Shown in pieces: positions 3,919-51,918 of a stretch of 64,000 bases of DNA; the first letter of the stretch is position 1, and each line of letters opens with the position of its first letter. The stretch lies in NCBI GenBank assembly GCA_965655095.1, contig OZ296648.1, forward strand, positions 42,284,001 through 42,348,000. The letters are read 5' to 3'. Both the position numbers and the translations under genes were made by a program. The notes under the pieces are model-generated. The model had not been told where the DNA came from. It did no database searches and saw nothing but the letters and a program-made list of their open reading frames with translations. This DNA is from Haplodiscus bocki (Eukaryota).

Positions 3919-4790
3919 TTACATGTCAGTAAATTGAAACTTCGTGTTTTCGAAGGCCAAAAGTTTGTTAGTGAAATATTGATTGTAGCCCTTTTTAAAT
4001 TGAAAGTCTGCTAGTGCAATGCACTTTTTATGTCCGACTGGGAAACGCGGTTTTTTGACGAAAGTCTCGTGATTTTTCCGCAGCTTTTGCTCGTAGCTGG
4101 AAAACAAGTTTTTTGATACCTTGTTGGGTGCAAGTTTGGTTATTCTCTTCACGCGGGATTTGATTGTTTCAACAAACGACTGCAACGTGGTGATGTAGTT
4201 GTAAGTCCATGTGCTCAAAATACTTGTAAATTAATCTTTTGAGCGAACGAAGGTTTCTTTCAGCGATGCTGGCTTGGTCATACTTTCTGCCGTAGTATTG
4301 TTCATTTCTCCTGTCCCAAGAGTTCTTGAAAAAAATCTTTAAAATCTGTCCCTTTGTCTCACCAAACCTCTTCGGTTTCTTTCTTCGCAATCATTCTTCT
4401 ACAAGTTCTTGCAATTCCTTCAGCTGCCTCGGCGCGCCTCGTTAAAACTCAGGTAACGCAAAAGAACATGTACCACAACCATCCCTGATTCCCGTGTTAA
4501 AATCGGCTACGTTATACACAAATGCTCAGTCGACTGACGATTTTTCAATGATGTCATATGCAATCACGTCTAGGCGTGCTAATTTGCCTTTGGTTTGTTC
4601 ATATTTCGTATGAGCGTCTTTCAGTTTTAGGAAAGCTTCAACTGTTTTTCCTGATATTTTCGCTGCTCTCTCAACATTGGCTACACTACCAAATGCGGAT
4701 GCTCCGTCATCATAAAGATGTTCTAGCCTCTTCTCCTCAGCTGTCCAGACATCCCCAACATTTGCCTGCTTCTTCTTCTGTTGCAGAAAC
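3919..4790 (-). pseudogene. Polinton retroviral-like integrase relic
   Basis: LYDDGASAFGSVANVERAAKISGKTVEAFLKLKDAHTKY...LDVIAYDI (Polinton integrase N-terminus), IAERNLRSLKRLIYKY (catalytic E helix), KPRFPVGHK...FKKGYNQYFT (C-terminus). Split across three frames. Confidence 0.8.
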
Positions 4791-30698: not shown

Positions 30699-33011
30699 CA
30701 GGCACCCGGAATTTCTGCCGCCAAAAAAAGTAAATTCTGCTTGTTAAATTCCTCAATTCCGCTTATTTCTGCTCTTTAGGCAAAACGTGGGTAAATTGCA
30801 AGTTTAATTGAAAAATTCATTCAAACTTTTTAAAATCGCTGTTAAAATAACAATAAAGAAGGTTTTTCAAGGCTTCTTCAGATAAATTTGCTCCGTTTTG
30901 GTGAATCAAGTAGTGTTAAAATACTAAAACTTCTCTCCACGTCGGCTGCGGAGGCGGGTGTCCACAGGCTCCGTGAAGCCTTCCACATGAGTGGCAGTTC
31001 ATTGTTCTTCCCCTCCGAAAATTTGTCAATTTCAAAGTTTTCTAAGGGGTATACTGCATTCATATAAATAACCCACTCGTTCAGGAACTCGATATCGGAA
31101 GAAAACCCAGGAATATTAAGATAGTCAACAATATTCCGACTGAGACTTGCCTTCTGGCGAATATCAAAAATTCTTGCGCTTTTGAAGAAGTTTAGCGCTG
31201 GTTTCTGGACATCAACATGCTTGTTAAATTTCTCAGACGCTATTTTAAACGCACTTTGATATGTAATTGGGCAATCTGCCAGACTCCGATTTGCTAAATT
31301 GGCTTCGGATAATATGGCCTCGATTTCTTCCGGAAACTGAACCTGGGTTCTTCCTGCTTCAAGTACCGCCTGAAAATTCGTAATATTATTGTAAACCTGG
31401 TGGGCAATAAGTTTTTGGTTTAACTCAAAGAGTTCAATAAAATCCGATATAGAATTTCCGTAAAAGGAAGCAAAGGCTAATTCTAATATCAGCTCCCAAA
31501 ATTTCGTACCAAGAATAGTAAGAATTTCTCGGGTATTGGAATTCTCATGACCTTGATCATGTTCTGCTTCGAAGAAGGATTTATACAGATGCAGCCTTTC
31601 CTTGTGGTAAATGCTGGCCTGTATCCAACTAGTCCATCTGGTAAAATTTGCTATAACAGGCATCTTGGATTTACTTTCAGCATTTTGCCTCTGAAAGTCA
31701 ACCCAGCGAAATTTTCGCCCAGCATTGATTTGTTTTTTGAAGAGTGCATTAAGCAGAAGAAGGCATTGTTTTGCAAGTTTGAGCTCATGATGCCACGTCT
31801 CACCCACTAGATTTAGAATGTGAGCCCAACATCCGATCCACGTAATTTGCGGGAACACCTAAGTACGGTTACATGACTTTTTGTAAATATGAAACAAAAA
31901 GTCGGAAACGATGGGATACTCACTTTATGTAGAATATCGGAGTAGGCTTTCTTGCAATATGCAGTGTTGTCTGTGATTAGGAAGAATACACAATCGCGGA
32001 GTTGATGAACGATAATTGCGTCATTGGCAGCGGCCGCGACGTTTGCGTGATTTGCGGGTTCGTGTAGAAAGACAGACTCCAACAATAATGCTTTGTCCCC
32101 AACCCTGACCAAAAAATTCAATATTTGCCTTTCTCTCTGGTCCGTTGATTCATCGACTATAATAGACAACTTTTCGTTATTTTTCCTACATTCGTCCAGG
32201 AAAACTGAAACAGCACCATGTACTTCTTCGGCAACTTCAGGTATGTAATAGGTTCGAAGATTGTCAGCGGAACTCAGGGCCCCTCCTTGGTTGGGGGTTT
32301 ATTATTTTGATCCAAGGGGTCATTTTGTCAACTTTCTCCAATGGTATGTTGCTCGCCAAATACATCTTAACAAATCCAGTAACAAATTTGGAACGGCTTT
32401 CCTGGCTTTTCTGCACCGTCGTAAGGGTCACCTGCCTCAAAACTGGTGCCGACGTAGTTTCTTGCACTTCGCGCTTGTTCTTGTGACTTTTACTCTGCAA
32501 ATGATCTTTGATGGTGGAAGATTTCAAATCGACCGAATGACAGCAGAACTTACAGAAAAGCAGGCCATCGTCTTCGTAAAATATAGTCGAGTACTCCTTT
32601 GCGCGAGATGAAACTGTAAATTTCCCGGTAACCTTCGGCATTTTTCAATACGAGAGGATAGAAATATTTTAACACTGGTAGGAAAGGAATAGGAAATAAT
32701 GAAGAGCAGGTTTGCAGGAATAATTCAAAAGCAAGAATATCGCGCATGTAAATTGCAGAGCAGGACCTGTTCTGTGTACTGCCTACGCCTGAAGTGTTTG
32801 CCTAAGTACTTACCGCGTAGTCAACAAGCTCCAATCTTGATTTTGATGCGCATACATCGTATTTTATTTAAAATTTTCTATAACATGCAAACATATTCTG
32901 GAAAATTTCAATTCTGCGGCTATTCTGTTCTAAAAAAGTGTTTTCCGCTTTTGAACCTCAATTCTGCCTATTCTGCCCATTTCTGCTGCCAGCAGATTTT
33001 CCGGGTGTCTG
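30699..33011 (-). mobile_element. Full-length hAT DNA transposon (CGGBP1-like transposase)
   Basis: TIRs CAGGCACCCGGAATTTCTGC and CAGACACCCGGAAAATCTGC; perfect 8-bp TSD ATGATAGG at 30691-30698 and 33012-33019. Confidence 0.95.
30878..32641 (-). pseudogene. hAT transposase with a 65-bp intron (31923-31859) and one frameshift (~32295)
   Basis: N-terminal zinc finger LFCKFCCHSVD..TIKDHLQSKSH; DDE residues in IIVDES, ITDNTAY and DVERSFS; CWAH motif. A GTGAGT...TTAG phase-0 intron joins ILHK|VFPQ. Confidence 0.88.
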
Positions 33012-34441: not shown

Positions 34442-34626
34442 CTGCAACACAGTTGATGAATGATCAACTAACTATGCATTCATTAGAATCCCATATATTA
34501 AAGGGCCACAATTCACTCGAAGTTTCAATTTTTTTATTCAAGTCGATAACATATCTGAAATCTTATGACGTTTCATGAAAAGATTAGGATACAGAAGAAA
34601 ATCCGGAAAAAAACACAGATTCTAAC

Positions 34627-36358
34627 CCGCAGGAAGAACATATGTTTGTGAGTTGTCCTGAAAAACGTAACATTTCATTGCACCAGTTTTCCATCGCAGA
34701 CTGTTCGAGATCGTTCTTGTAATCTGATTGGTTAAATCTGAAGTCACACCACAGGCGGGATGCTTGACATGACATCCAAAACTGGACAATTTGTCACTAT
34801 TCATAAGTATTTCGATGATACGCGCTCTCTTGAACAGAATTGCAATCATCATTAAATTGAACCGATCAACGACACCAGGTATATCTAGAACAGCGGCTTC
34901 AGTGGCCGACAAAATGCGTTTCTTATCTCCACCTGAGAAAAGGTAGGCCTCTAATGGTTCCACTGCACCAACAGATACTGCCCAACACGCCTGAAGAAAC
35001 TTCCAGTCTAATTTGCCCATTGAGAACCGGTTGTTACCCTGAAAATATTTGTAATCACTCATCGGATCTCTACCATTCTGGTCAAGATTCGCAGCCGCAG
35101 CCTGTAGTTGCTGAGCCTTTTTCTTCACATCAGCAAAAGATGGGCTCTTCTTGCGAATATTGAGCCTCTTCATTCTTTCCTCTATTGTAAACACGGCTTC
35201 CCATTTCCGACTATTTGCTCCTTTAGGGGTGTTTTTTCTATTCAAAGTTACAGGCGGTGAGATTTTTTCTTTCCCACTTTGCGTTTCATCTATATTGTTT
35301 ATACTATGCTGCGATCGCTTCTTTCCACAAACAGAACATTTCATAGTTTTCCAATAATTCTCATAGGTACATGCGGAACATTGCCACTTATGACTACTAC
35401 CCACGGTTTTGCTGTTCGGTCCTCCTGAGGTAGAGTGAGTTGCTTTACTATTGCGTCTATCATTAGAAGAAATAGACGAGCCCGCACTTCCATCGTCGCT
35501 CGAAACAACTTCAGGGGATTTAGATTTTGAGAAATTTTCATTATTACAAGATTCATTTGACTTCCTCACCCAATCAGGGGGAGCTCTGCAAACAGCGCAC
35601 ACCTTGCTCCTAGGCCAATTGTAATAGGTACACCTGGGACAAGACCATTTCTGAGAAGAATCTAAAATGATATGTGGAGATGTTGAGTCATTTTCAAAAC
35701 TGTTTGAGGTTGTGGGTTGGTTGCCCTTGGTATCATTTGCATTAGTTTTCAGGATATCTTCAACATTCGTTACAGCGACAGATTCTTCATCTTTGTTTAT
35801 TGCTTCGTTCGATGACGTTCTTTGGTGACAACTTGTGGTCTCCATTTGGTTAAACTCAATAGAACTGGCAGAATCCGGTCTGTTGTTGATAGGATACGAA
35901 TCCATATACGAGAGATTGTTGCTAGTCGACGGAGTGGGCGAGTCTCCCCAGTTATCAATGATTGCGGCAGGATGTGAAGTAGCTGCAGGTGAAACATCTT
36001 TAACTTCGCTGTCAAATATATTACCCGGTGACGGCTGGTACTGCTCGGTACACATTGAACACCGGGCAGATTTACTATAATTTAAGTAAGTGCATCTCGG
36101 ACAAGACCAACTTCCATCATCGGAGGAGGTTCCTCCGCCAATTGTGGGAAGTCCACCGACAATTGATTTGGAACTTCCATTCTCTGTCTTTTCATTCTCG
36201 ATGATGAGAGTAGGCTTTTCACTAACTGTTTCAGACTGCCGTTCTTGGCTGTGTGTGCTATCAGCGCTCTCAGACTTGTCCAATATTGTACACTCTCGAT
36301 GCCGCGCAGCATCTTTACTTTTATTTTCTTCGACTTTCAGCCCATCGCTTTGAAGCAT
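34627..36358 (-). CDS. ZRANB1: TRABID/ZRANB1 large coding exon (3 NZF/RanBP2 zinc fingers + AnkUBD)
   Basis: Three W-x-C-x2-CTY-x-N-x6-C-x2-C fingers; AnkUBD-like DWKFLQACWAVSVGAVEPLEAYLFSGGD. Acceptor tttttgcag lies 8 nt before ATG 36358; donor GCGG|gttaga; 185-bp intron to the next exon. Confidence 0.93.
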
Positions 36359-42099: not shown

Positions 42100-43532
42100 C
42101 TTTCGTCACTGGAAGTCAATAAGAGCTGACATCATAACATCAGCTACAAACTGTAAGTCAAAAAAATAAAGGCGTCGGGTTTTTGACAGACAAAATCTTC
42201 TGCAGCAAAAAAAATGCGTCGACGTTTTCAGTAAAAACATCATATCGGTCACACTTTCGGAAAAGAGGACATAACCATCGTCCAAGTGTATAGCCCGATA
42301 AAGTTGAAGAAACATATGAAGAACTTAAATGCATCCCCGAGAAGCTTACGTGCGACAAAGGAAAGCAATTAATTGCCATAGGACACTTTGATGGAGTAAA
42401 TGGCCACCATGCTGAAACCACAATGTGTAAGGATTTTGTAATTAATTACAGAAATCGCAAAGGAGAAATGTTTCCAGATCTTTCCGCTCTGGATTCAGTG
42501 ATCCTAAAAACCAGAAGTATCAAACAGTTGGAACGACAGCAGTGATCGTGGCTGTTTGCAGATCGGAGCCTTTCAGATTACACTAGGAGACCTTACCTTC
42601 AGCACCTGTGTCAGCAAATGCAAAGTTTTGCATAAAACTGACAAATTCTCTGATCACTTCCTGTTGTAGCAGAATTAAAAGTGACAAAAGTCACCTCCGT
42701 TAAGTCAACAGTGGAATTGAGTCAAATAAGCAGCAGGAGTTTCAACAAGAGCGAACTTATCTTGGTTGAAACCTTGAAATGCCTCCCAAAAATCAAAATT
42801 CTCCGCCCATGACATCTCTTTTGGAGAAAAGCATTAAGACAGCGGACATTATGCAAACAGAAACTTGCCGAAAGAAGTGAAACACGTGGATGACGAATGC
42901 ATCTAAGAATTGAAAAATCAGCGGTCTCGAGATCAGAAAGTTAAAAAAAAATCGGACAATTATCAACCGATCCAAAAGCAGGAATGCAAAAAAATAGAGA
43001 TCCAAAAACTCTCGAAAAATTGTATTACTTCGTGAACTACATGATAGAAAGAGAAATTTGGCAAGCTCAATAGATTGTCCAATCAAATCAATCTGTGAGA
43101 AAAAACAACTGTTAGGGAGATAATTTACTTGCCCCTGACTTAGCTTGAACGAGAAAGCTAAAAACCAGAAAGACTTTACAAAAACTATCGGAAAGGACGG
43201 ACACTTAGAACAGTCAAAGAATGAATAAAAGGAGGTACCAGTTCGTCGATTATACATATTCACAGCACGAAAGAAACACACGAAAGAAAACCTGGGAAGG
43301 TCTTTAGTTAGGACACTACTGGTACATGCTTTTATGAAAAAATTCTGGTATAATAAAATTAATGATAATAATATTAATGATAAAACGTATATTAAAAAAT
43401 TTGAATTTACAAAGTTGCTGGGATTATCCATCCCTTACGAAAAATATTCACGAGACACACAAAGAGCGTCTACAGCCAAGTCACCATGAACATGAAATAT
43501 TTTCAGAAGTCTTGAACGAAAAAAACACCATA
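42100..43532 (+). pseudogene. Old decayed LINE ORF2 (endonuclease/linker), continued at 47279-47520 beyond the inserted younger LINE
   Basis: SDHF-PVVAEL-like endonuclease end at ~42650. An RT fragment SGVSLGNVLGFLFILNVDD..FSADTK resumes at ~47320, on the other side of the TSD. Confidence 0.5.
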
Positions 43533-43656
43533 TATATATATATATATACTGAATTTACGCCCAAAGCGAGGGGACTGCTCCCATTAAATGAGTTCATTGA
43601 TAACAGTTTCCGTTGTTGTTACTCTTGAAATATCTGTCGAATCAGGCTTCAATAGT

Positions 43657-46375
43657 TTATGCATTCATGATCATCTGTCTTCTGTGGATGCTCCTACACG
43701 TTACACATAGGCAAACAAAGTGCCATGAGCAGATGTTGTTTTCTTGATATTGTTCAACAAATTTTTTCCACATTTGGGTAAGTAATTTCTTTTTGATATT
43801 TTCATTGTCGGTGATGTTCAAGTGTTTGGAAAGGACATTAGCTCGATAACAGGCACGATAAAAGAAATTGTCACGTAATAATTCACAGGATATTTGGGGT
43901 AAGTAGAACTGTATTTCATTTCGCCCATATTTCATAACAATATTGGAATCAAAATTTACATCATATTTGTGTGTAACAATACCCGATAACAGAATAATTT
44001 CTTTCATCTCCATGAAATATGTCAAAGGCAAAATTTGCAGGTGAGATAATCTGTCCTTGTAGGAATCTAAATAGCACATCCATTTGGTGATTTTCTTGTT
44101 GAAGGCCTCTAGAGCTCTGACATCCATTCTTGATAAGGAATAACACTCTGATGCATAGAGAAGTTGGGGGATAATTGTACTCATGTACAAGAGAAGTTTT
44201 GAATATTGCGAAATAGATTTGCTGACATTTCTCTTCAACATCTGGAATGTTTTGTTTGCCTTTGCAAGCTTAGTTTCTATATGAGCAGTCCATTTGAGGT
44301 TGTTACTTACCACCAGACCCAGGTCAGTATTTCGAGTACACTCAGCAATTTCCTCAGAGTATATTTCAGGTGAAAAATTTAGCTGTCCCTTGAGCAAGAG
44401 ATAGTGACATTTCCTCGAGTTGAAAAGTAAAAAGCGGGTTTTACTCCAAATTTGCAAGCTCATGAGGTCGTTTTTGAGAAGAAACGATTGAGAGCAGGAT
44501 CCGATATATATACCAGATAGGTCGTCGGCAAAAAGATATGCATATAAATAGAGCAATTCATTTGGTAAGTCATCGATGTAGATAATGAAGCAAAGAAGAC
44601 CAATAAGGGTACCTTGTGCTACACCGCAATTGATTTTTTCCACTTTTGAAGTGGCGTTATTGATTTTCACCATTATTTTCCTGTCTGTAATGTATGATGT
44701 AAGCAGTGAGTAAATCTGTGAGGATAACCCAAGTCGCTGGAGCTTTTTCGTTAGAATTACGTGGTCTATGCTATCAAAAGCTCGTTTAAAAACAAACAGG
44801 AAGAGCGCAATGCATTCAGATTTTGTCCATTTCTCATATATATGGGATAAAGTCTTCAGTAATCTTAGCACAGGTGATCGTTTCGCTCTAAAGCCATACT
44901 GTAAGTCGTTTGAATGTGGGGAATACGTTGCTAACAGCTGGTTGTATACATTTATTTCAAAAATTTTTGAAATGGTGTTCGGCAAGCTAATAGGGCGATA
45001 ATTTTCAACAAATTTTTTATCACCTTTTTTGAATACGGGAACTACTAATGTAAGCTTCCACGTTTCTGGGTAAACTCCCAGACGGGCTACATTTCGATAG
45101 ATGTTATACAATGGGTGTTGAATAGCATCTGCGGTGTTTTTGAACAATGCGACTGGAGGTTCATCAGGACCTTTTGCTTTATTCACATTGAGTTTGTTTG
45201 ATGTTTTATAGATTTCAGTCTTCGTGATCCTGATTTCTGTATTCCCAGGGTTGCTATATTCAGGAGTTGTAGTCATTCTATCAGTTTTGTTAACACTGCT
45301 GAAATATTCACAAAAACAAATTAGCTCGATCTTTATCATCCTCAGCCCAATTCCTGTCATTCGGGATATCTCTGTAAATACGTGGAGATATTTCTTCACG
45401 TTTAAGTTGTCGAAAGTGGCGAAACATTTTGCTTGAGTTTTTGGTAGCAAAAATAGTTCGCTGATATTCACACAGATCTTTGCATAATTCATTGGATAAT
45501 GTGGCCTGTAGGCTACATTTTTTAATCAAAAGAGTGTTGCACGGTTTAGTTTTCAGACGTTTGACAACTGTATTCAATTTTTTGATTAGATGTGATGTAG
45601 AACTGCTGACCCATGGTGCTAAGGACGAGCGATGCAATGTTCCTACTGGCGTAACCTGTTCAATAAGTTGATATATCCAAGAGTAAAATTCTTCGATATT
45701 TTTGTCACAGTTACTATAACACTTAGGTACGAAAGGAGTTTCTATCATGAGAGAAGCCAAAGAATTAAAATCACATTTAGAGAAACTATACTCTTTCTTG
45801 TGATTGGTGATATTCTTGTAGTATTTATGATTGCTTTTAATGCAAACACTAAATCGGACAGGATAGTGATTTGAGCTGGGACCGTTTGGCATGACAGAGT
45901 TGCATTCAATTATAGACTGGAAGATTTCAGGATCTTTGGTCAATATGAGATCAAGAATACTGCTTCTGGTGGTATTAAAGTTTACCAATTGTATATAGTT
46001 TCGTTGCTCAAATTCATTGATAAATAATCTTTCATATTCATCAGCAGATTCATTGATATTCCAGTTGGTTTTTAGAGGATTCATATCACCACCTAGTATC
46101 TGGTAGTCAGTTTTGTGATTTTCTATAAAATTAAGAAGCATGATCCACTCATTAATAGATGCTCGATATTTACCATTTGAGGGAGTGTTATAGACTACAA
46201 TCAACGCAATTGAGCATGATCCAGCGTCAATTAGGACAAAAACAGCTGATTGTCGCAGATAATCCGAAGTAAAAGGAATATTTGTGTGAGGAATATTTCT
46301 TTTGATAGCGATTGCTCGTTTGTCAAGATTAATCAGACTTTGGCAGTTGAATAGAAATACATCATACTGAAATAG
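43657..46375 (-). pseudogene. LINE A ORF2 (APE endonuclease + reverse transcriptase); one frameshift at ~45312 and an in-frame EN deletion
   Basis: EN motifs LFNCQSL, ILGGDMN, ILDLILT, SNHYPV. RT motifs KAKGPD, NYRPISL, QYGFR, GVAQGTLIG, YLFADD. One extra T in ANLF(C)EYFSSV shifts the frame. Confidence 0.9.
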
Positions 46376-47260
46376 TCAGTTTTTCTCAGGTAGCTGGTTT
46401 GTTGCAGAAAGAGCTGCTTGGTTTTTCAGAATTGCATAATCAGATAGGTCAATTTCTTTGCCGTCAACAAAAAGTTTAAGATCTCTAATTTTGATTAAAC
46501 TTCTTTCAGTGCCTTGGTTTAGCAGATCTCTGCGTATTTGCGGAATGCGATTTTCATTCAATTTTTCTTCTGAGGATAGCATCCTGCTAATGAAAATTGG
46601 TTTGTGAAAGTTTTTCATTTTTGGACCCTTTGATAAAATTTTCCGAACATCCCAAGCTGATGATAAGGTGAGTATAACTGCGCGCGGTCTTTCTTTGTTT
46701 CTTACAAATTTTCCTAGGCGCTTTATGTCCATTATTTGCGGGGATTCTTCAAGGTGAGTTAAGACTTCATTTACAGCATCCATTTCATGATTCAATATCG
46801 CAGAAGCTCGATTTTCAGGCGAAACTTGCTCAACGTTTGCTTCAGCTAAATTGTGAATTTTTAGTTGAAAAGGAGCATTTGGGGGTAACTTATTGTCTTT
46901 TACAAGATCTGTTTCAATATCTTTTGGCTTATTTATTTCGCGCGCAGGCTCGAGTTTCGTCTTAATTTCAGTAAGAGAGTTTTGTACTGAATTCACCGAA
47001 ATTTTCAGCTCTTTGATAGCAAGTAAGGAATTGGACTTAGCTTCGGATTTGAAGGCATCATTGTCTCTGCAAGAGCTACAGATCCAGAGACAACCACTAA
47101 CTCTGCCCATCACAGTGACATCTTCTTGAGAGAGCCCAGCACATGAACATCCATGATACCAGACACTACAATTGTCACAGGCAATGCCAGAGGGGTCGCC
47201 ATCTTTCACCACTCTTTTGCAAGATCCACATTTCGACGTCGAAGTTGAAGTTTTTGACAT
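46376..47260 (-). CDS. LINE A ORF1 protein (PHD finger + coiled coil + RRM-like region)
   Basis: Intact 294-aa ORF. PHD-type CGSC..IACDNCSVWYHGCSC..WICSSC; C-terminal KRLGKF..RPRAVILTL typical of LINE ORF1. Confidence 0.88.
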   Translation of the reverse strand: MSKTSTSTSKCGSCKRVVKDGDPSGIACDNCSVWYHGCSCAGLSQEDVTVMGRVSGCLWICSSCRDNDAFKSEAKSNSLLAIKELKISVNSVQNSLTEIKTKLEPAREINKPKDIETDLVKDNKLPPNAPFQLKIHNLAEANVEQVSPENRASAILNHEMDAVNEVLTHLEESPQIMDIKRLGKFVRNKERPRAVILTLSSAWDVRKILSKGPKMKNFHKPIFISRMLSSEEKLNENRIPQIRRDLLNQGTERSLIKIRDLKLFVDGKEIDLSDYAILKNQAALSATNQLPEKN

Positions 47261-48159
47261 TTCAATCGGAAACTATTTACACCATAGACATTCTGAGATC
47301 CGAAGACCCTCTGCAAAGTCTCAGTGGTGTCTCTCTAGGGAATGTGCTGGGCTTTTTATTTATTCTCAATGTTGACGACAGGCTGGAATTAACAATGTCC
47401 CAAAGCTTTTGTTTTTCAGCCGACACTAAGTCGATCGTCTCGGTAGCACTAGTTCCAAAAATGCCCAAAACTATCTTGTTGCGCTGAATCAACGGTCACT
47501 TATTATTAATATTTCCCTTATGCATTCACATGCAAGATCCTTATCACTATTATACGGAGGCAGAGCATCAAAGCGAACCCTCCAAAGTCTAAACGGCCTG
47601 TCTATGAGCGCCCTAAAAATAAAAACGTTAAAAATTGTCTCGGAAATTTTTCAACAAATAACACCGACTTTCAAAGTTTTTCTGAGCGAAGTTTCAACAA
47701 TAAGCTAAATTAGTCTTCTTGCATTCCGGTACTGAAAATTGATTTAGAGAAAAATCATAAAAGTACTCCCCGGTATATCACGGAATTTCTCTGCAAATTA
47801 TTTATTTGAGGGGCTTCCAGTTTGTCGGAACTTGTACCCCGAATAGAAATAGACAGAATTGAGGGCTCACTCCTGAACAAACTATTTAGAAGACCATTTC
47901 AATGGAGCCCACTGTCAGATTTTGGATAAAGTTTCAAAATTTTTCCATTGTGAATTCCATAGACAGTGAATACTTTACATAATGCAAAGTGGGGAAAAAA
48001 GTTTCAGTTTTCTTTTGAGGGCGTTTTTTCGCGGAAGAATTCCCTTCAGGTTGAGTATTGGATACAATTTATTTAAAGGAAATGTTTCCAAGATAAGAAA
48101 TCCGTATGATTTAACGGGTTCTAGGTACGATTCATTGTGTCTTATTAACTTATTAAATA

Positions 48160-48861
48160 GTGTCTTTTCAGGAAGATGATTACTGGGGCAGCCGTGGCGG
48201 CCCCCTATTCTTTTCCCCTCAACGACAAATGGTCCATATTCTTGGCACCTCATCACTCTCCCGAGACATCCAAAAAATTGATTACAACTCCAAGCGAACC
48301 CTGAAGAAAACAATAACAGCAATCCCTGGTCTTTCGTTCAATCAGAACAACAAAAACGACCTCAAGTTTATTCCCACCTTGCTGTCAGAAGGAAGCTTGT
48401 CAAAGAGTTCAAAGAAGGAGAAACTTATCATCTGGCACGACGCTGTCAACAATTCCCTCTCCAGACACCCTTCAAACTTCATTACCCGATTGAAGCCAAA
48501 GCAGCTACAGCGAATTCTCACACACAACAAGGACTGCATATCAGCAATTGTGTACTGCAAACGCTCCGGAACTCCTGACGTGTTTCAAAAATTGTTTGAA
48601 AGTGGTATCCTGACGCTGAACGTGAAGAAGTCCAATTTGTCGAAACGAAAATCGAAATTTTTGTTCAACATCAAAGACCTTGCCCGAGTTCATCCAACGA
48701 CAAAAATTGACTTCACCATTCAACTAAGATTCTTAAATCTCAGGAGACACGAAGAAAACGGGAAAAGAATGTTTCAAGAACTGTCCTCGCTCACGCCGAA
48801 GAACCTGAAAAACTCATTACAAAGAAACGCTCCAAAAGCTGTGAGAACAAACCCTCCTTGA
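48160..48861 (+). CDS. SGNH/GDSL hydrolase-like ORF upstream of LINE B (3' end replaced by an inverted-repeat insertion)
   Basis: Motifs in SGNH block order and spacing: HILGTSSL (I), AIPGLSF (II), LIIWHDAVNNSL (III), RVHP (V). The likely start is the Met of MVHILG. Confidence 0.5.
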   Translation: MSFQEDDYWGSRGGPLFFSPQRQMVHILGTSSLSRDIQKIDYNSKRTLKKTITAIPGLSFNQNNKNDLKFIPTLLSEGSLSKSSKKEKLIIWHDAVNNSLSRHPSNFITRLKPKQLQRILTHNKDCISAIVYCKRSGTPDVFQKLFESGILTLNVKKSNLSKRKSKFLFNIKDLARVHPTTKIDFTIQLRFLNLRRHEENGKRMFQELSSLTPKNLKNSLQRNAPKAVRTNPP

Positions 48862-48967
48862 AGCAGCGAATAAACCAGAATGAACAAAACTGAAGGTAAC
48901 GCCTTTTCACGAGCACAGTTCTTGAAACATTCTTTTCCCGTTTTCCTCGTGACTCCTGAGATTTAAG
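48732..48967. repeat. 58-bp inverted repeat (3 mismatches) with ~120-bp spacer; MITE-like
   Basis: 48732-48789 matches the reverse complement of 48910-48967. A partial extra copy lies at ~49030-49070. Confidence 0.85.
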
Positions 48968-49092
48968 TATCTCGGACGTTGCTTGGGACCCGAGAAGTGT
49001 CCACAGGTTTCGAAGCTTTGTTCTCCTGATTTTCTCGTGACACCTGAGATTTAATTATCTCGGAAGCTGCTTGGTGGCTGGGAGCTCAAACA

Positions 49093-51918
49093 ATGAGTCC
49101 ATCAGAACCCCGCAAACGTGGCATGACCACATGCAAAACTTGCGATGAGAAAGTATCTGGAACACGACGCTTTTGATGCTTCTCTTGTGGTGTAGTACTC
49201 CACAAGTGGACAGAATGTACTGGTTTCTCAGCTTCAGTTGTCAAAAGTTTGCGAAAAGTGACAAAAAACGTGCCCCTCCTTTGCAATTTTTGCGCTGAAA
49301 ACGAACGCGAAACGCTGTTTCAAGACGTCTACGCCACCAGAATGAACCGCCTCGAAGAAGAAAACAACCACAAACTGCAAGCAATACAGGACAAACTCGA
49401 CGAGTACAAAATGAACGTCAGCGACACGTACTCATCTGTTGTGCCTCTGAAAAAAGAAACTAAAAACATTGACTTGAAGCTACAACAGCCTGTTCAAGCG
49501 AAAGCATTTGAGTCAAAGGTTGCAGAACGCAGAGGCCTCCGACTACGAGACATTCCTGAAATGTCTGGCATTCCTCCTGACAAAGCGTTCAAGAAAACCA
49601 TGGAAAAGTAGAATCTGTCTTCGAGTTCCTTGCCGGAAAGAAGCTCAATATCAAAAGCCTAAAAGGAGCTCGCCAATTCAGAGACCTCAGTCCCAAACCA
49701 CGAATCTTGATAGTACAGGTCGATAACGAAGCGTGTCGTACACTTCTGTTGAAGGCCTCACGAGAACTGAAGAATTACCGAGAAATGTCGGGACCAGTAC
49801 TTCTCTCGAAGGAACTTACAATCGAAGAACTAAAAACTGAAAACGAATCACTTCGAATGAGAAAAGTGAAAATCGATCAAGGAGTTCATAGGGAGAAGCT
49901 TCGTATCCGAAATCTCAAACTTGAGATGCAAATTGACCAAGGGGTTTGGGAAGAGGTTTACGACAACATGGCGGACGGTGCTGAAGCACCGTCGGCCTGA
50001 CTACCTAACCGAAATCACGAAATGCAAGTAGACCTACTGATGTGGTATGTTAGAAATATGCCCGATTTGAATCGTCGAACAACTTTATCAAATCCACTTG
50101 CCTTGCAACAATTCCACATCATTAGCCTGTGCGAAGCTGGGCTAGTAGACACAAAACTGAACAGTGGCCTTTTTCTTGGAAACCGGCCAAAATTCCGTCG
50201 TGATCGACAACGTAAGCGATCCGGGAAATCGAGTCACGGTGGCGTACTAATCGCCGTCGATAGCTCGATACCCTGTGAAGAAATTACCGAGTTCAACGTT
50301 TTTTAAGACGTTGTGAGCATTGTCTGCCATTTTTGTTCAATTCAATTTTTAGTTTTATCGGTTTACTGTCCCCCTGAAAATAGTCTTCACCGATGGGCTA
50401 GCAGTAACTTTACCCACTAACTGCAAGAAATTGACAAGGTTCAACAACAATACTACATAACGGAAATCATCGTCACTGGAGACATCAGTTTCCCGATAAC
50501 TGATAGGAACAGTTTCTCAAGCACGAGTGACTACGAAAACTCCAAAGCTGGAATGTTCGTGAACAGGGGCTTCGAACAAAATCTAAGGAAGACAACAAGC
50601 GGCTCACTTGATTTTTGTCTGCTGATTAAACCAGAAAAAGTAGTTCGATGGTTTAGCAAAACCTTTTCAATCAAAAGTGCCTTTCTTATTGGAAACTTTC
50701 GCTCTGATCATGACCCTTTCTCAATTTTCTTCAATATGCAAACTCTTTCCGTTAAAACAACCCAGACTCACTCCTTTTCCTACTCAAGAGTGGATTTCAA
50801 CAAGGTCAACAAGTACATCATTGAGAACCCCTTCTCTTTATACTGCTATAGTAATTGCGACAAACTTTTGGAAACGTGGTATGAGTGGCTACATGAAATC
50901 ATGCTTGCAACAATTCCCATACGTACTAATCATAGAAGCAGTCTCCCAATCTGGTTCACATCGCCAACATCTTGCATCATCAGAAAACTGAAGTCTCTAC
51001 AACGCAAATTGAATTCTGAACCATCGCCTGCACTGCGAAACAAAGTTAGAAGTCTAGAAGACCTGGTGGCCTCAAAGATCAACGAAGATCTCACGCTATA
51101 CAAAGAAAGTAATTTCAAATTTTTACATTTTAGCACGATACAAAGATACTTACGCTGTATTCGTTGGCCTGATCCCATACCGACCGAAATTTGCCATGAA
51201 AACTCAACAGCTAACACGGACGAAGAGAAGAGCTTTCTTTTTAATACTTTCTTCTGTAGTGTCTTTTCGAAATCTAACGACCATGAAGATGAATGTACTG
51301 CTGAATCTACCGAAATACCTGCGATATTGGAAGACCAATCGATAGAACCAAACTTTTCAAATGACATTACAAATCTACTCAAATCTACAGAAGAGTGTAA
51401 CGAAATGGATTTGCAGAACGTCACAAGTCAACTACAAAACCCGCCTGATCCAACTGAAGCTGATACCAATTAATTTATACATCGAAATGCACTATTTACT
51501 AACCTTCTGTAAATAGTAGCTGATCAACACAACTTCGACTGGAAGAAGCACATCAACCCTATTGAAAAAAACTCCATGAGAACATCAACATCAACCCCGT
51601 GTTATCTATCAAAAAAAAAAGAGCAAAAGCAAAGACATTTTTTGGTACAGAACTCTTCAACTTCACCGAAGACTATCGAAAACTGTAAATTTACAAGAAC
51701 TGTGCTACGTGAAAGAAGGTATCCAAGATTACAACTGGAAGTTCCTCATCAACAAATTTTGTGAAGGAAACTTGTGCTCATGGCAAATCAACTGTCAATG
51801 TTGAACCTGCTCGCCATGAAGTAACTGGTATTTGCGTGGGCTCAATACCCTTCCGTTGGAGAAACAAAATATTATTATTATTATTAATCTTATTTATGAA
51901 AATATTATTATTATTATT
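49093..51918 (+). mobile_element. CR1/L2-like LINE (element B): disrupted PHD-ORF1, endonuclease, RT internally deleted, (ATT)n tail
   Basis: ORF1 from ATG 49093 (CKTC..CFSC..H..C..LLCNFC; stop at 49174, frameshift ~49600) ends at TGA 50000. EN motifs ISLCE, RRDR..HGGVLIAV, VTGDI, SDHDP. The sequence jumps to a post-RT fragment NFDWKKHI at ~51530. (ATT)5 occurs twice within 51871-51918. Confidence 0.85.

What the first reader, a model, noticed from the sequence alone, without database searches (positions are those of the whole stretch)
49980..50060. LINE B independently shows the same ORF1-TGA-CTA-ORF2 in-frame junction
Seen: ...CCG TCG GCC TGA (49998-50000) CTA CCT AAC CGA AAT CAC GAA ATG CAA GTA GAC CTA CTG ATG TGG TAT GTT AGA (EN motif I region), all in one frame. 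Elements A and B show no visible nucleotide similarity around the junction except TGACTA, so the hexamer appears conserved while its flanks diverged. Caveats: B has an in-frame ATG at 50022 that could allow reinitiation, and neither element has the +7 G of the strongest UGA-CUAG motif.
Basis: partly seen in the sequence, partly recalled or inferred. Interest (0 to 1): 0.7.

Follow-up and report, generated by a model that had tools for sequence, protein, structure and literature searches.

The report
Leaky-stop junction in coral LINE elements
A dead copy of a jumping gene (LINE) in what appears to be a coral genome keeps the family's hallmark, one in-frame TGA-CTA "leaky stop" between its two genes; five deeply diverged relatives share it, so the endonuclease/reverse transcriptase is most likely made as a rare read-through fusion, as retroviruses make Gag-Pol.

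Summary
ORF1 of LINE B ends in TGA at 49998-50000, CTA follows, and the endonuclease start of ORF2 continues in the same frame. The window copy itself is dead, with four in-frame stops, a 1-nt deletion and a ~1.1-kb RT deletion.

The junction is a family trait:
- The intact sister L008 has ORF1, then TGA CTA, then 967 open codons.
- Other B copies and piled contigs keep TGACTA.
- Five lineages with only 25-31% ORF2 identity (A, B, L002/L082, L007, L010) all have one frame, one TGA, then CTA (four lineages) or CTG (one).
- Flanking sequence matches only at chance level.
- In four lineages the first in-frame Met lies after the catalytic Asn of the endonuclease.

ATG 50022 is not conserved. ATG 50040 is conserved, but only within B.

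The best reading (about 0.65) is type II UGA-CUA stop-codon readthrough giving an ORF1-ORF2 fusion. AUG-independent reinitiation is the main rival. There is no expression or protein evidence.

A and B are homologous, so this is a retained feature and not an independent origin. The scan has noted the same junction in other windows of this genome. The reviews of LINE translation that I could search do not list readthrough. I class it as a new variant of a known kind.

The parts
48142..51894 (+). LINE B: a decayed copy of a ~4.8-kb CR1-like non-LTR retrotransposon family, ending in a (TAT)n-type tail
   Evidence: blastn against the intact sister L008 (4070-8858) gives 91.7% identity, with a ~1080-nt internal deletion near 51380. 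The 3' end is seen.
48160..48861 (+). Extra upstream ORF (233 aa) in the 5' region of the B family; function unknown
   Evidence: ORF list. A 226-aa counterpart is called in L008 at 4091-4771. Pfam gives no match for the window ORF and only a sub-threshold hit for the L008 counterpart.
49093..49997 (+). B ORF1 (about 302 codons in intact sisters); here broken by an in-frame stop at 49174 and a 1-nt deletion near 49604
   Evidence: It is 75-87% identical to about 60 sister ORF1 products, and 18 of them end at the same ...APSA/APSV position.
49998..50003 (+). ORF1 stop TGA plus CTA: the candidate type II readthrough hexamer
   Evidence: It is identical in L008, L009 and L011. The shown rows of the contig pile-up list no variant at these six bases (18 weaker rows were not shown).
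50001..50039 (+). 13 in-frame codons between the stop and the conserved ATG; they contain the non-conserved ATG at 50022
   Evidence: The T>C variant at 50023 turns ATG into ACG in sister copies.
50040..50057 (+). Conserved in-frame ATG followed by EN motif I (MWNVR in sisters); the catalytic Asn codon is changed in this copy (50046)
50001..51802 (+). B ORF2 remnant: EN plus linker, RT core deleted; in-frame stops at 50304, 50418 and 51802
43530..47279 (-). LINE A: a ~3.9-kb family member, 98% identical to L001, with a 171-nt EN deletion, a frameshift near 45400 and a (TA)n tail
46373..46378 (-). A junction: TGA CTA, in frame with the EN motif FNCQSL ten codons downstream

Best explanation
The site is the ORF1/ORF2 junction of a dead copy of a CR1-like (PHD-ORF1) LINE. 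In the living family, ORF1 and ORF2 form one continuous reading frame of about 1260 codons interrupted by a single UGA in the UGA-CUA context. Most ribosomes stop there and make ORF1p. I infer that a small fraction decode UGA with a near-cognate tRNA and continue, making an ORF1p-EN-RT fusion. That would set a high ORF1p to ORF2p ratio and tie the enzyme to its own RNP, as Gag and Gag-Pol do. Shown here: the in-frame layout, the conservation of the stop and its 3' codon across deep lineages, and the lack of a usable AUG in four of the five lineages. Inferred, not shown: that readthrough occurs, how efficient it is, and that the fusion is the active enzyme.
For: (1) Intact representatives have exactly one stop in a 1030-1260-codon frame. 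After the TGA, L008 has 967 open codons, L002 945, L010 860, and L007 722 up to the contig end.
(2) Five lineages with 25-31% ORF2 identity, separated by 2-3 substitutions per site on the RT tree, all have TGA followed by CTA (A, B, L007, L010) or CTG (L002 and its 77%-identical relative L082).
(3) Flank identity is at chance level (0.28 and 0.32) while the hexamer is at 0.93. CTA is only 1.8% of codons and 17% of Leu codons in these elements, so four or more of five being CTA has p about 0.004 even if Leu is taken as given (my arithmetic).
(4) The first in-frame Met comes after the catalytic EN Asn motif in A (codon 36 against 10), L002 (108 against 9), L007 (59 against 18) and L010 (82 against 18). 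An AUG-started ORF2 would lack Asn in all four, and would lack the ETW Glu in L002, L007 and L010. In A the first Met sits three residues before that Glu.
(5) Within the B family, L008, L009, L011, the window copy and the contigs of runs X1, X3 and X6 keep TGACTA.
(6) UGACUA, more generally UGACUD, is the experimentally established type II readthrough hexamer (Sindbis, O'nyong-nyong, PSIV; UGACUG in Trocara virus). UGACUAG supports readthrough in human genes (PMC13517186).
(7) There is no 2A motif and no UAAUG overlap.
(8) Relatives use other fusion-like layouts, including single long ORFs and a +1 overlap without an AUG.
Against: There is no RNA, ribosome-profiling or peptide evidence; no RNA run holds the stretch. 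No 3' stimulatory structure is shared between lineages: fold z-scores are -0.7, +1.3, +1.6 and -0.2, and only B reaches -2.4, with no covariation. B has a conserved in-frame ATG 14 codons after the stop, directly before the EN motif, so B alone could reinitiate. TGA is also the common ORF2 stop in these elements (3 of 4), so 'always TGA' carries little weight on its own. The lineages share ancestry, and the RT tree neither shows nor excludes a single origin. Human L1 shows that ORF2 can be translated without its AUG by another route (PMC5972666).
Confidence: 0.65

Rival explanations
1. Termination-reinitiation. Ribosomes finish ORF1 at UGA and some restart nearby, at ATG 50040 in the B family or without an AUG as in human L1. 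ORF2p would then be a separate protein, and the shared frame would be incidental.
For: B copies all keep an in-frame ATG just before the EN Asn motif. L1 ORF2 translation is AUG-independent and SART1 uses stop-start coupling (PMC5972666; PMC3894237). There is no shared 3' structure of the kind many readthrough sites have.
Against: Reinitiation does not need a shared frame, yet all five lineages are in frame (chance about 1/81 once the first is given). It does not explain why CTA/CTG is kept while the flanks are randomised. CUA differs from AUG at two positions, so it is a poor near-cognate start. Four lineages have no AUG before the catalytic Asn, and none has a UAAUG-type overlap.
Confidence: 0.22
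2. There is no special mechanism. TGA-CTA and the shared frame are inherited leftovers or coincidence, and ORF2 is expressed some other way, such as an IRES or a separate transcript.
For: The lineages are related, so they are not independent draws. The window copies are dead. TGA is a common stop in these elements.
Against: At 25-31% protein identity and chance-level flank identity, six neutral bases would not survive in five lineages. None of the roughly 35 more distant LINE loci surveyed has TGA-CTA at the junction. The linker length varies (9-18 codons) but the frame never does.
Confidence: 0.08
3. The UGA is decoded as a sense codon by a dedicated route, such as selenocysteine or a host suppressor tRNA, and not by context-driven leakiness.
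For: UGA is the codon used for Sec, and only UGA is seen at these junctions.
Against: Sec insertion does not need CUA after the stop. The context matches the viral type II signal exactly.
Confidence: 0.03

Closest known systems
Type II viral stop-codon readthrough (alphavirus nsP3-UGA-CUA-nsP4, PSIV UGA-CUA; Beier and Grimm classification)
   Same: The hexamer is the same: UGACUA, with a UGACUG variant as in Trocara virus. The polymerase lies downstream in frame, and the upstream product is the abundant one (PMC13517186).
   Different: This is a nuclear retrotransposon, not an RNA virus. No extended 3' stem-loop is shared between lineages. Readthrough has not been measured.
Retroviral and LTR-retroelement Gag-stop-Pol readthrough (MuLV UAG-GGA with pseudoknot; Candida Tca2 gag-UGA-pol)
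   Same: The logic is the same: a nucleic-acid-binding structural protein, a leaky stop, then the RT-bearing enzyme as a fusion.
   Different: The stop context is different (type III UAG-G plus pseudoknot in MuLV). Tca2's bypass mechanism was itself questioned (abstract of PMC2194720). LINEs have no protease to separate the fusion.
Cellular UGA-CUAG readthrough genes of mammals and insects (PMC4132726, listed; reviewed in PMC13517186)
   Same: Lineages L007 and L010 carry the full UGA-CUAG. A and B carry UGA-CUA followed by U or C.
   Different: Those are C-terminal extensions of host proteins, not junctions between two genes.
Known LINE ORF2 translation routes: SART1 UAAUG coupling, human L1 unconventional termination-reinitiation, 2A 'StopGo' in Ingi/L1Tc and some metazoan LINEs (PMC3894237, PMC5972666, PMC3708506)
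   Same: They address the same problem, making a little ORF2p from a bicistronic LINE RNA. One relative, L012, does carry NPGP before its EN.
   Different: None of the defining signals is present here: there is no UAAUG, no inter-ORF spacer and no NPGP. The review of LINE protein biogenesis does not mention readthrough.

Membership tests
Programmed stop-codon readthrough, type II (UGACUA/UGACUD) | UGA stop followed directly by CUA (or CUG/CUU) | tested here: met
   Window B 49998-50003 and A 46378-46373. The same holds in L001, L003, L004, L008, L009, L011, L007 and L010. L002 and L082 have CTG.
Programmed stop-codon readthrough, type II (UGACUA/UGACUD) | Downstream ORF in the same frame, open and coding, with no other stop between | tested here: met
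   There are 722-967 open codons after the stop in L007, L010, L002 and L008, and a single stop in the whole frame. The window copy itself is broken further downstream.
Programmed stop-codon readthrough, type II (UGACUA/UGACUD) | Stop and context conserved across diverged relatives beyond the neutral expectation | tested here: met
   Hexamer identity is 0.93 against 0.28 and 0.32 in the flanks, and CTA is 17% of Leu codons. ORF2 identity between lineages is 25-31%.
Programmed stop-codon readthrough, type II (UGACUA/UGACUD) | 3' stimulatory RNA structure (needed only conditionally for UGACUA) | tested here: inconclusive
   Only B folds better than shuffled sequence (z -2.4), and that stem has no compensatory changes. 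Four lineages show nothing.
Programmed stop-codon readthrough, type II (UGACUA/UGACUD) | A read-through protein product is actually made | not testable with these tools
   No RNA run holds the stretch, and no proteomic or ribosome-profiling data are available.
APE-type non-LTR retrotransposon, CR1-like group with PHD-type ORF1 | APE endonuclease and RT in ORF2 | tested here: met
   Pfam Exo_endo_phos_2 and RVT_1 hit A and the ORF2 of L008. Invariant N, ETW, GD.N and SDH motifs appear in the alignment.
APE-type non-LTR retrotransposon, CR1-like group with PHD-type ORF1 | Cys/His PHD-like finger at the ORF1 N-terminus | tested here: inconclusive
   Pfam PHD hits are below the curated cut-off (18.6 and 21.7 bits against 24). 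Conserved C..C..H..C..C..C columns are present. B ORF1 gives no Pfam hit.
APE-type non-LTR retrotransposon, CR1-like group with PHD-type ORF1 | Clade placement by RT phylogeny against named reference elements | not testable with these tools
   No reference LINE library was available. The RT tree of session loci only is unresolved at depth. Indirect hints are the microsatellite tails and a relative whose ORF1 carries an esterase/OSK domain.
Termination-reinitiation or translational coupling (SART1, L1) | Overlapping or adjacent stop-start (UAAUG), or a start codon upstream of the essential EN residues | tested here: not met
   There is no UAAUG. The first in-frame Met lies after the EN Asn motif in four of five lineages. 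It is met only in B, at ATG 50040.
2A 'StopGo' LINEs | NPGP motif at the junction | tested here: not met
   There is no NPG(P) anywhere in the five representatives.

The most novel reading that the evidence does not exclude
A whole group of cnidarian CR1-like LINEs makes its endonuclease/RT only as a Gag-Pol-style ORF1-ORF2 fusion through UGA-CUA(G) readthrough. Neighbouring LINE lineages reach the same end by other recoding routes: a +1 shift at a conserved CGC-UAA-C ORF1 end, in-frame UAG-GG stops, and single fused ORFs. Under this reading, LINEs would mirror the full retroviral repertoire of recoding.
Probability: 0.45. Interest if true: 0.75.

Novelty: new variant of a known kind. Interest (0 to 1): 0.6.

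Why it matters
How LINEs translate ORF2 from a bicistronic RNA is a long-standing open question. The mechanisms described so far are stop-start coupling, unconventional reinitiation, IRES and 2A. This would add a clade whose sequence alone points to classic leaky-stop readthrough. It would give a simple natural system in which to test that idea, because the signal is six bases long and the prediction is a fusion protein. It would also imply that ORF2p need not be a free protein. Finally, it matters for annotation: ORF finders will miss or truncate ORF2 in these elements because it has no start codon.

Tried and rejected
**Literature**
- Nine searches found no paper describing readthrough at a LINE ORF1/ORF2 junction.
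- My memory lead that Candida Zorro3 uses readthrough was wrong. It has an inter-ORF region and needs its first ORF2 ATG (PMC1965478).
- A second memory lead could not be checked in this library and stays unverified: that Arabidopsis ATLN/Ta11-type LINEs have an in-frame amber codon between their ORFs.

**Searches that gave nothing usable**
- The search for related loci with the ORF1 alignment failed because no stretch was conserved enough. The ORF2 alignment worked instead.
- L005 and L006 are deleted ORF1-EN fusions and tell nothing about the junction.
- L080 and L081 are weak ORF1-like hits with no ORF2 behind them, so they are also uninformative.

**Hypotheses tested and not supported**
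- A shared 3' RNA structure is not supported.
- Monophyly of the TGA-CTR lineages on an RT tree is unresolved. At least two changes are needed on the quick tree, one origin is not excluded, and long branches are flagged.
- Near-cognate initiation at the codon after the stop is rejected, because four of five lineages have CUA and not CUG.

**Not attempted or not obtainable**
- No RNA run was found, so expression is unknown.
- I did not build family consensus sequences. Natural copies were compared instead.

Full report
**Observation.** ORF1 ends GCC TGA at 49998-50000. CTA follows, and the frame runs on through ATG 50022 and ATG 50040 into the EN motif I region. The three-frame translation reads ...AEAPSA*LPNRNHEMQVDLLMWYVRNM.... 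Element A, on the minus strand, has AAC TGA CTA TTT at 46378-46370. TGACTA occurs 26 times in the window against 26 expected. The hexamer is therefore unremarkable as a word; what matters is its position.

**What the two elements are.**
- B spans 48142-51894 on the plus strand. It is 91.7% identical to L008, an apparently intact sister found in a public assembly.
- The window copy of B is dead. It has in-frame stops at 49174, 50304, 50418 and 51802, a 1-nt deletion near 49604, a loss of about 1080 nt of the RT core near 51380, and a changed catalytic Asn codon at 50046.
- A spans 47279-43530 on the minus strand. It is 98% identical to L001. Its ORF1 is intact (294 aa), but it has a 171-nt deletion in EN and a frameshift near 45400.
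- Pfam finds Exo_endo_phos_2 and RVT_1 in A, and a sub-threshold PHD finger in ORF1.
- Both elements end in short microsatellite tails.
- Runs holding small parts of the stretch are labelled coral metagenomes, and the main holders are coded.

**A and B are relatives, not independent inventions.** ORF1 matches at 29% over 76 aa (E 7e-08) and ORF2 at 33% over 199 aa (E 1e-25).

- A profile search returned about 60 B-family ORF1 products at 75-87% identity. Eighteen of them end at the same ...APSA/APSV position.
- Ten products, including the window's own, were called straight through the stop. Eight have W in place of TGA, one has C and one has a frameshift. Seven of the W products and the C product continue with L after the stop and one W product with V, then ..N.NHE[M/T]QV.LL and, in eight of the nine, MWNVRSM or a near variant; P0038 shifts frame at that point.
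- DNA of L008, L009 and L011 shows TGA CTA CCT.
- L008 has 967 open codons after the stop.
- Public contigs were laid on 49700-50300 at 80% or more likeness, from two runs of the coded organism and one reef metagenome; a fourth run laid nothing. The rows shown list no variant at 49998-50003, but they do show T>C at 50023. Eighteen weaker rows were not shown.
- A-family copies L001, L003 and L004 keep TGA CTA TTT.

**Deeper relatives.**
- L002 (ORF1 44% identical to A) and L082 (ORF1 77% identical to that of L002) have TGA CTG CAA.
- L007 and L010, from a JGI metagenome, have TGA CTA GGC and TGA CTA GCA. That is the full UGA-CUAG motif.
- ORF2 of the other four lineages is 25-31% identical to that of B. 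RT-tree path lengths from A and from B to the other lineages listed are 2.2-3.3 substitutions per site.
- Each representative has exactly one stop in a 748-1260-codon frame.
- The linker from the stop to the EN Asn motif varies (9, 10, 16, 18 and 18 codons), but the frame never does.

**Is this more than chance or inheritance?**
- Anchored at the stop, mean pairwise identity is 0.28 for the 30 nt upstream and 0.32 for the 30 nt downstream. That is chance level. The hexamer is at 0.93.
- CTA is 1.8% of codons and 17% of Leu codons in these elements. Even if Leu is taken as given, four or more of five being CTA has a probability of about 0.004 (my arithmetic).
- TGA alone is weak evidence, because three of four ORF2 stops are also TGA.
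- Among roughly 35 more distant LINE loci with a recognisable EN start, none has TGA-CTA at the junction.

**Start codons.**
- In A, L002, L007 and L010 the first in-frame Met lies at codon 36, 108, 59 and 82 after the stop.
- In all four that is behind the catalytic Asn motif (codons 9-18).
- In L002, L007 and L010 it is also behind the ETW Glu; in A it lies three residues before it.
- An AUG-started ORF2 would therefore lack essential EN residues.
- B differs. ATG 50022 is ACG in L009, L011, the only contig laid there in run X1, the one in X6, and four of the ten read-through products.
- ATG 50040, directly before WNVR, is present in every B copy whose DNA was read and in all but the frameshifted read-through product.

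**RNA structure.**
- The 150 nt after the stop fold no better than shuffles in A, L002, L007 and L010 (z -0.7, +1.3, +1.6, -0.2).
- B reaches z -2.4, with a long stem starting about 30-40 nt after the UGA. Four B copies give no compensatory change.
- UGACUA is reported to have high basal readthrough and to need a structure only conditionally (PMC13517186).

**Neighbouring lineages**.
- L021, L022, L023 and L025 have a recognisable ORF1 homologue that ends in a conserved ...CAT CGC TAA C. Their ORF2 lies in the +1 frame and has no Met before the EN motif.
- L034, whose ORF1 carries an esterase/OSK domain, and L071 have in-frame TAG GGT junctions.
- L018, L019 and L020 carry single ORFs of 1375-1558 codons.
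- A further family (L028 and relatives) has an ordinary spacer and an AUG.
- The TGA-CTR layout is therefore specific to part of this group, and fusion-type layouts are common around it.
- The RT tree is unresolved at depth and does not settle whether there was one origin or several.

**Literature.**
- UGACUA/UGACGG is the type II readthrough signal. The alphavirus form generalises to UGACUD, and UGACUAG works in human genes (PMC13517186).
- Reviews of LINE protein synthesis list SART1 stop-start coupling, L1 unconventional reinitiation, IRES and 2A, and do not mention readthrough (PMC3894237; PMC5972666; PMC5009743).
- Nine full-text searches found no description of a LINE readthrough junction.
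- The library is incomplete, and one memory lead (Arabidopsis LINEs with an in-frame amber codon) could not be checked.

**Mechanism.**
- The best-supported reading is context-driven readthrough of UGA giving an ORF1-EN-RT fusion at low frequency.
- Shown here: the layout, its conservation, the absence of alternative signals, and the match to a validated leaky context.
- Inferred: the readthrough itself, its rate, and the activity of the fusion.
- The main rival is reinitiation, with an AUG in B or without one as in L1. It explains neither the constant frame nor the conserved CUA.

**Earlier scan notes.** The same junction has been noted in several other windows of this genome, once with a follow-up that reached the same conclusion. 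I treated those notes as leads only.

Noticed in passing
L021:1940-2130, L022, L023:2186-2241, L025 (JGI metagenome contigs): A related LINE group has ORF1 ending in a conserved ...GGG AGG CAT CGC TAA C. Its ORF2 lies in the +1 frame, overlaps ORF1 by 56-254 nt, and has no Met before the EN motif. Skipping the T of TAA would join the two frames, so this looks like an antizyme-style +1 shift at the stop.
   Followed up: partly
L034:2049-2054, L071:3112-3117, L076:543-551: Other LINE relatives have in-frame TAG GGT (or TAG GGG) junctions between an upstream ORF and the EN-RT ORF, resembling the type III readthrough context. In L034 the upstream ORF is 513 codons long and carries an OSK/esterase domain.
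   Followed up: partly
L018:2005-6150, L019:963-5087, L020:520-5193; L014:121-5607: The nearest RT relatives carry one long ORF of 1375-1558 codons with about 450 or more residues before EN. L014 has a 450-codon ORF with a KH domain, then TGA CAT, then 1378 codons in frame.
   Followed up: partly
L012:154-520: An NPGP (2A-like) motif sits about 13 residues before the EN Asn motif of a related LINE, as described for some metazoan non-LTR elements (PMC3708506).
   Followed up: no
window 48160-48861 (+); L008:4091-4771: The B family carries an extra ORF of about 230 codons in its 930-nt 5' region, kept in the intact sister. Pfam gives no match for the window ORF and only a sub-threshold hit for the sister's.
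   Followed up: no
window 50027-50125; L008:5907-6010: In B, a 12-13-bp stem pairs the region around the conserved ATG (CUGAUGUGGAAU) with AUUCCACAUCAU about 70 nt downstream. The fold z-score is -2.4, with no covariation among four copies.
   Followed up: partly
window 47279-46946 versus L002:4983-5318: The first ~340 nt (start of ORF1) of A and of the L002 family are 80% identical in DNA, although their RTs are separated by more than 3 substitutions per site. This suggests exchange of ORF1 modules between LINE lineages.
   Followed up: no
window 34622-36358 (-): A 578-codon ORF with three RanBP-type zinc fingers and an ankyrin ubiquitin-binding domain. It looks like an exon of a TRABID/ZRANB1-like host gene.
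   Followed up: no
window 30878-31858 (-): A 326-codon ORF with weak transposase-like hits (IS66 DDE, hAT dimerisation domain). It is probably a remnant of a DNA transposon.
   Followed up: no
P0089 and P0035, P0043, P0045, P0053, P0088 (public gene calls): Public gene callers translated the junction TGA as W, apparently using an alternative code. This produced artificial ORF1-EN fusion proteins in the protein collection.
   Followed up: partly
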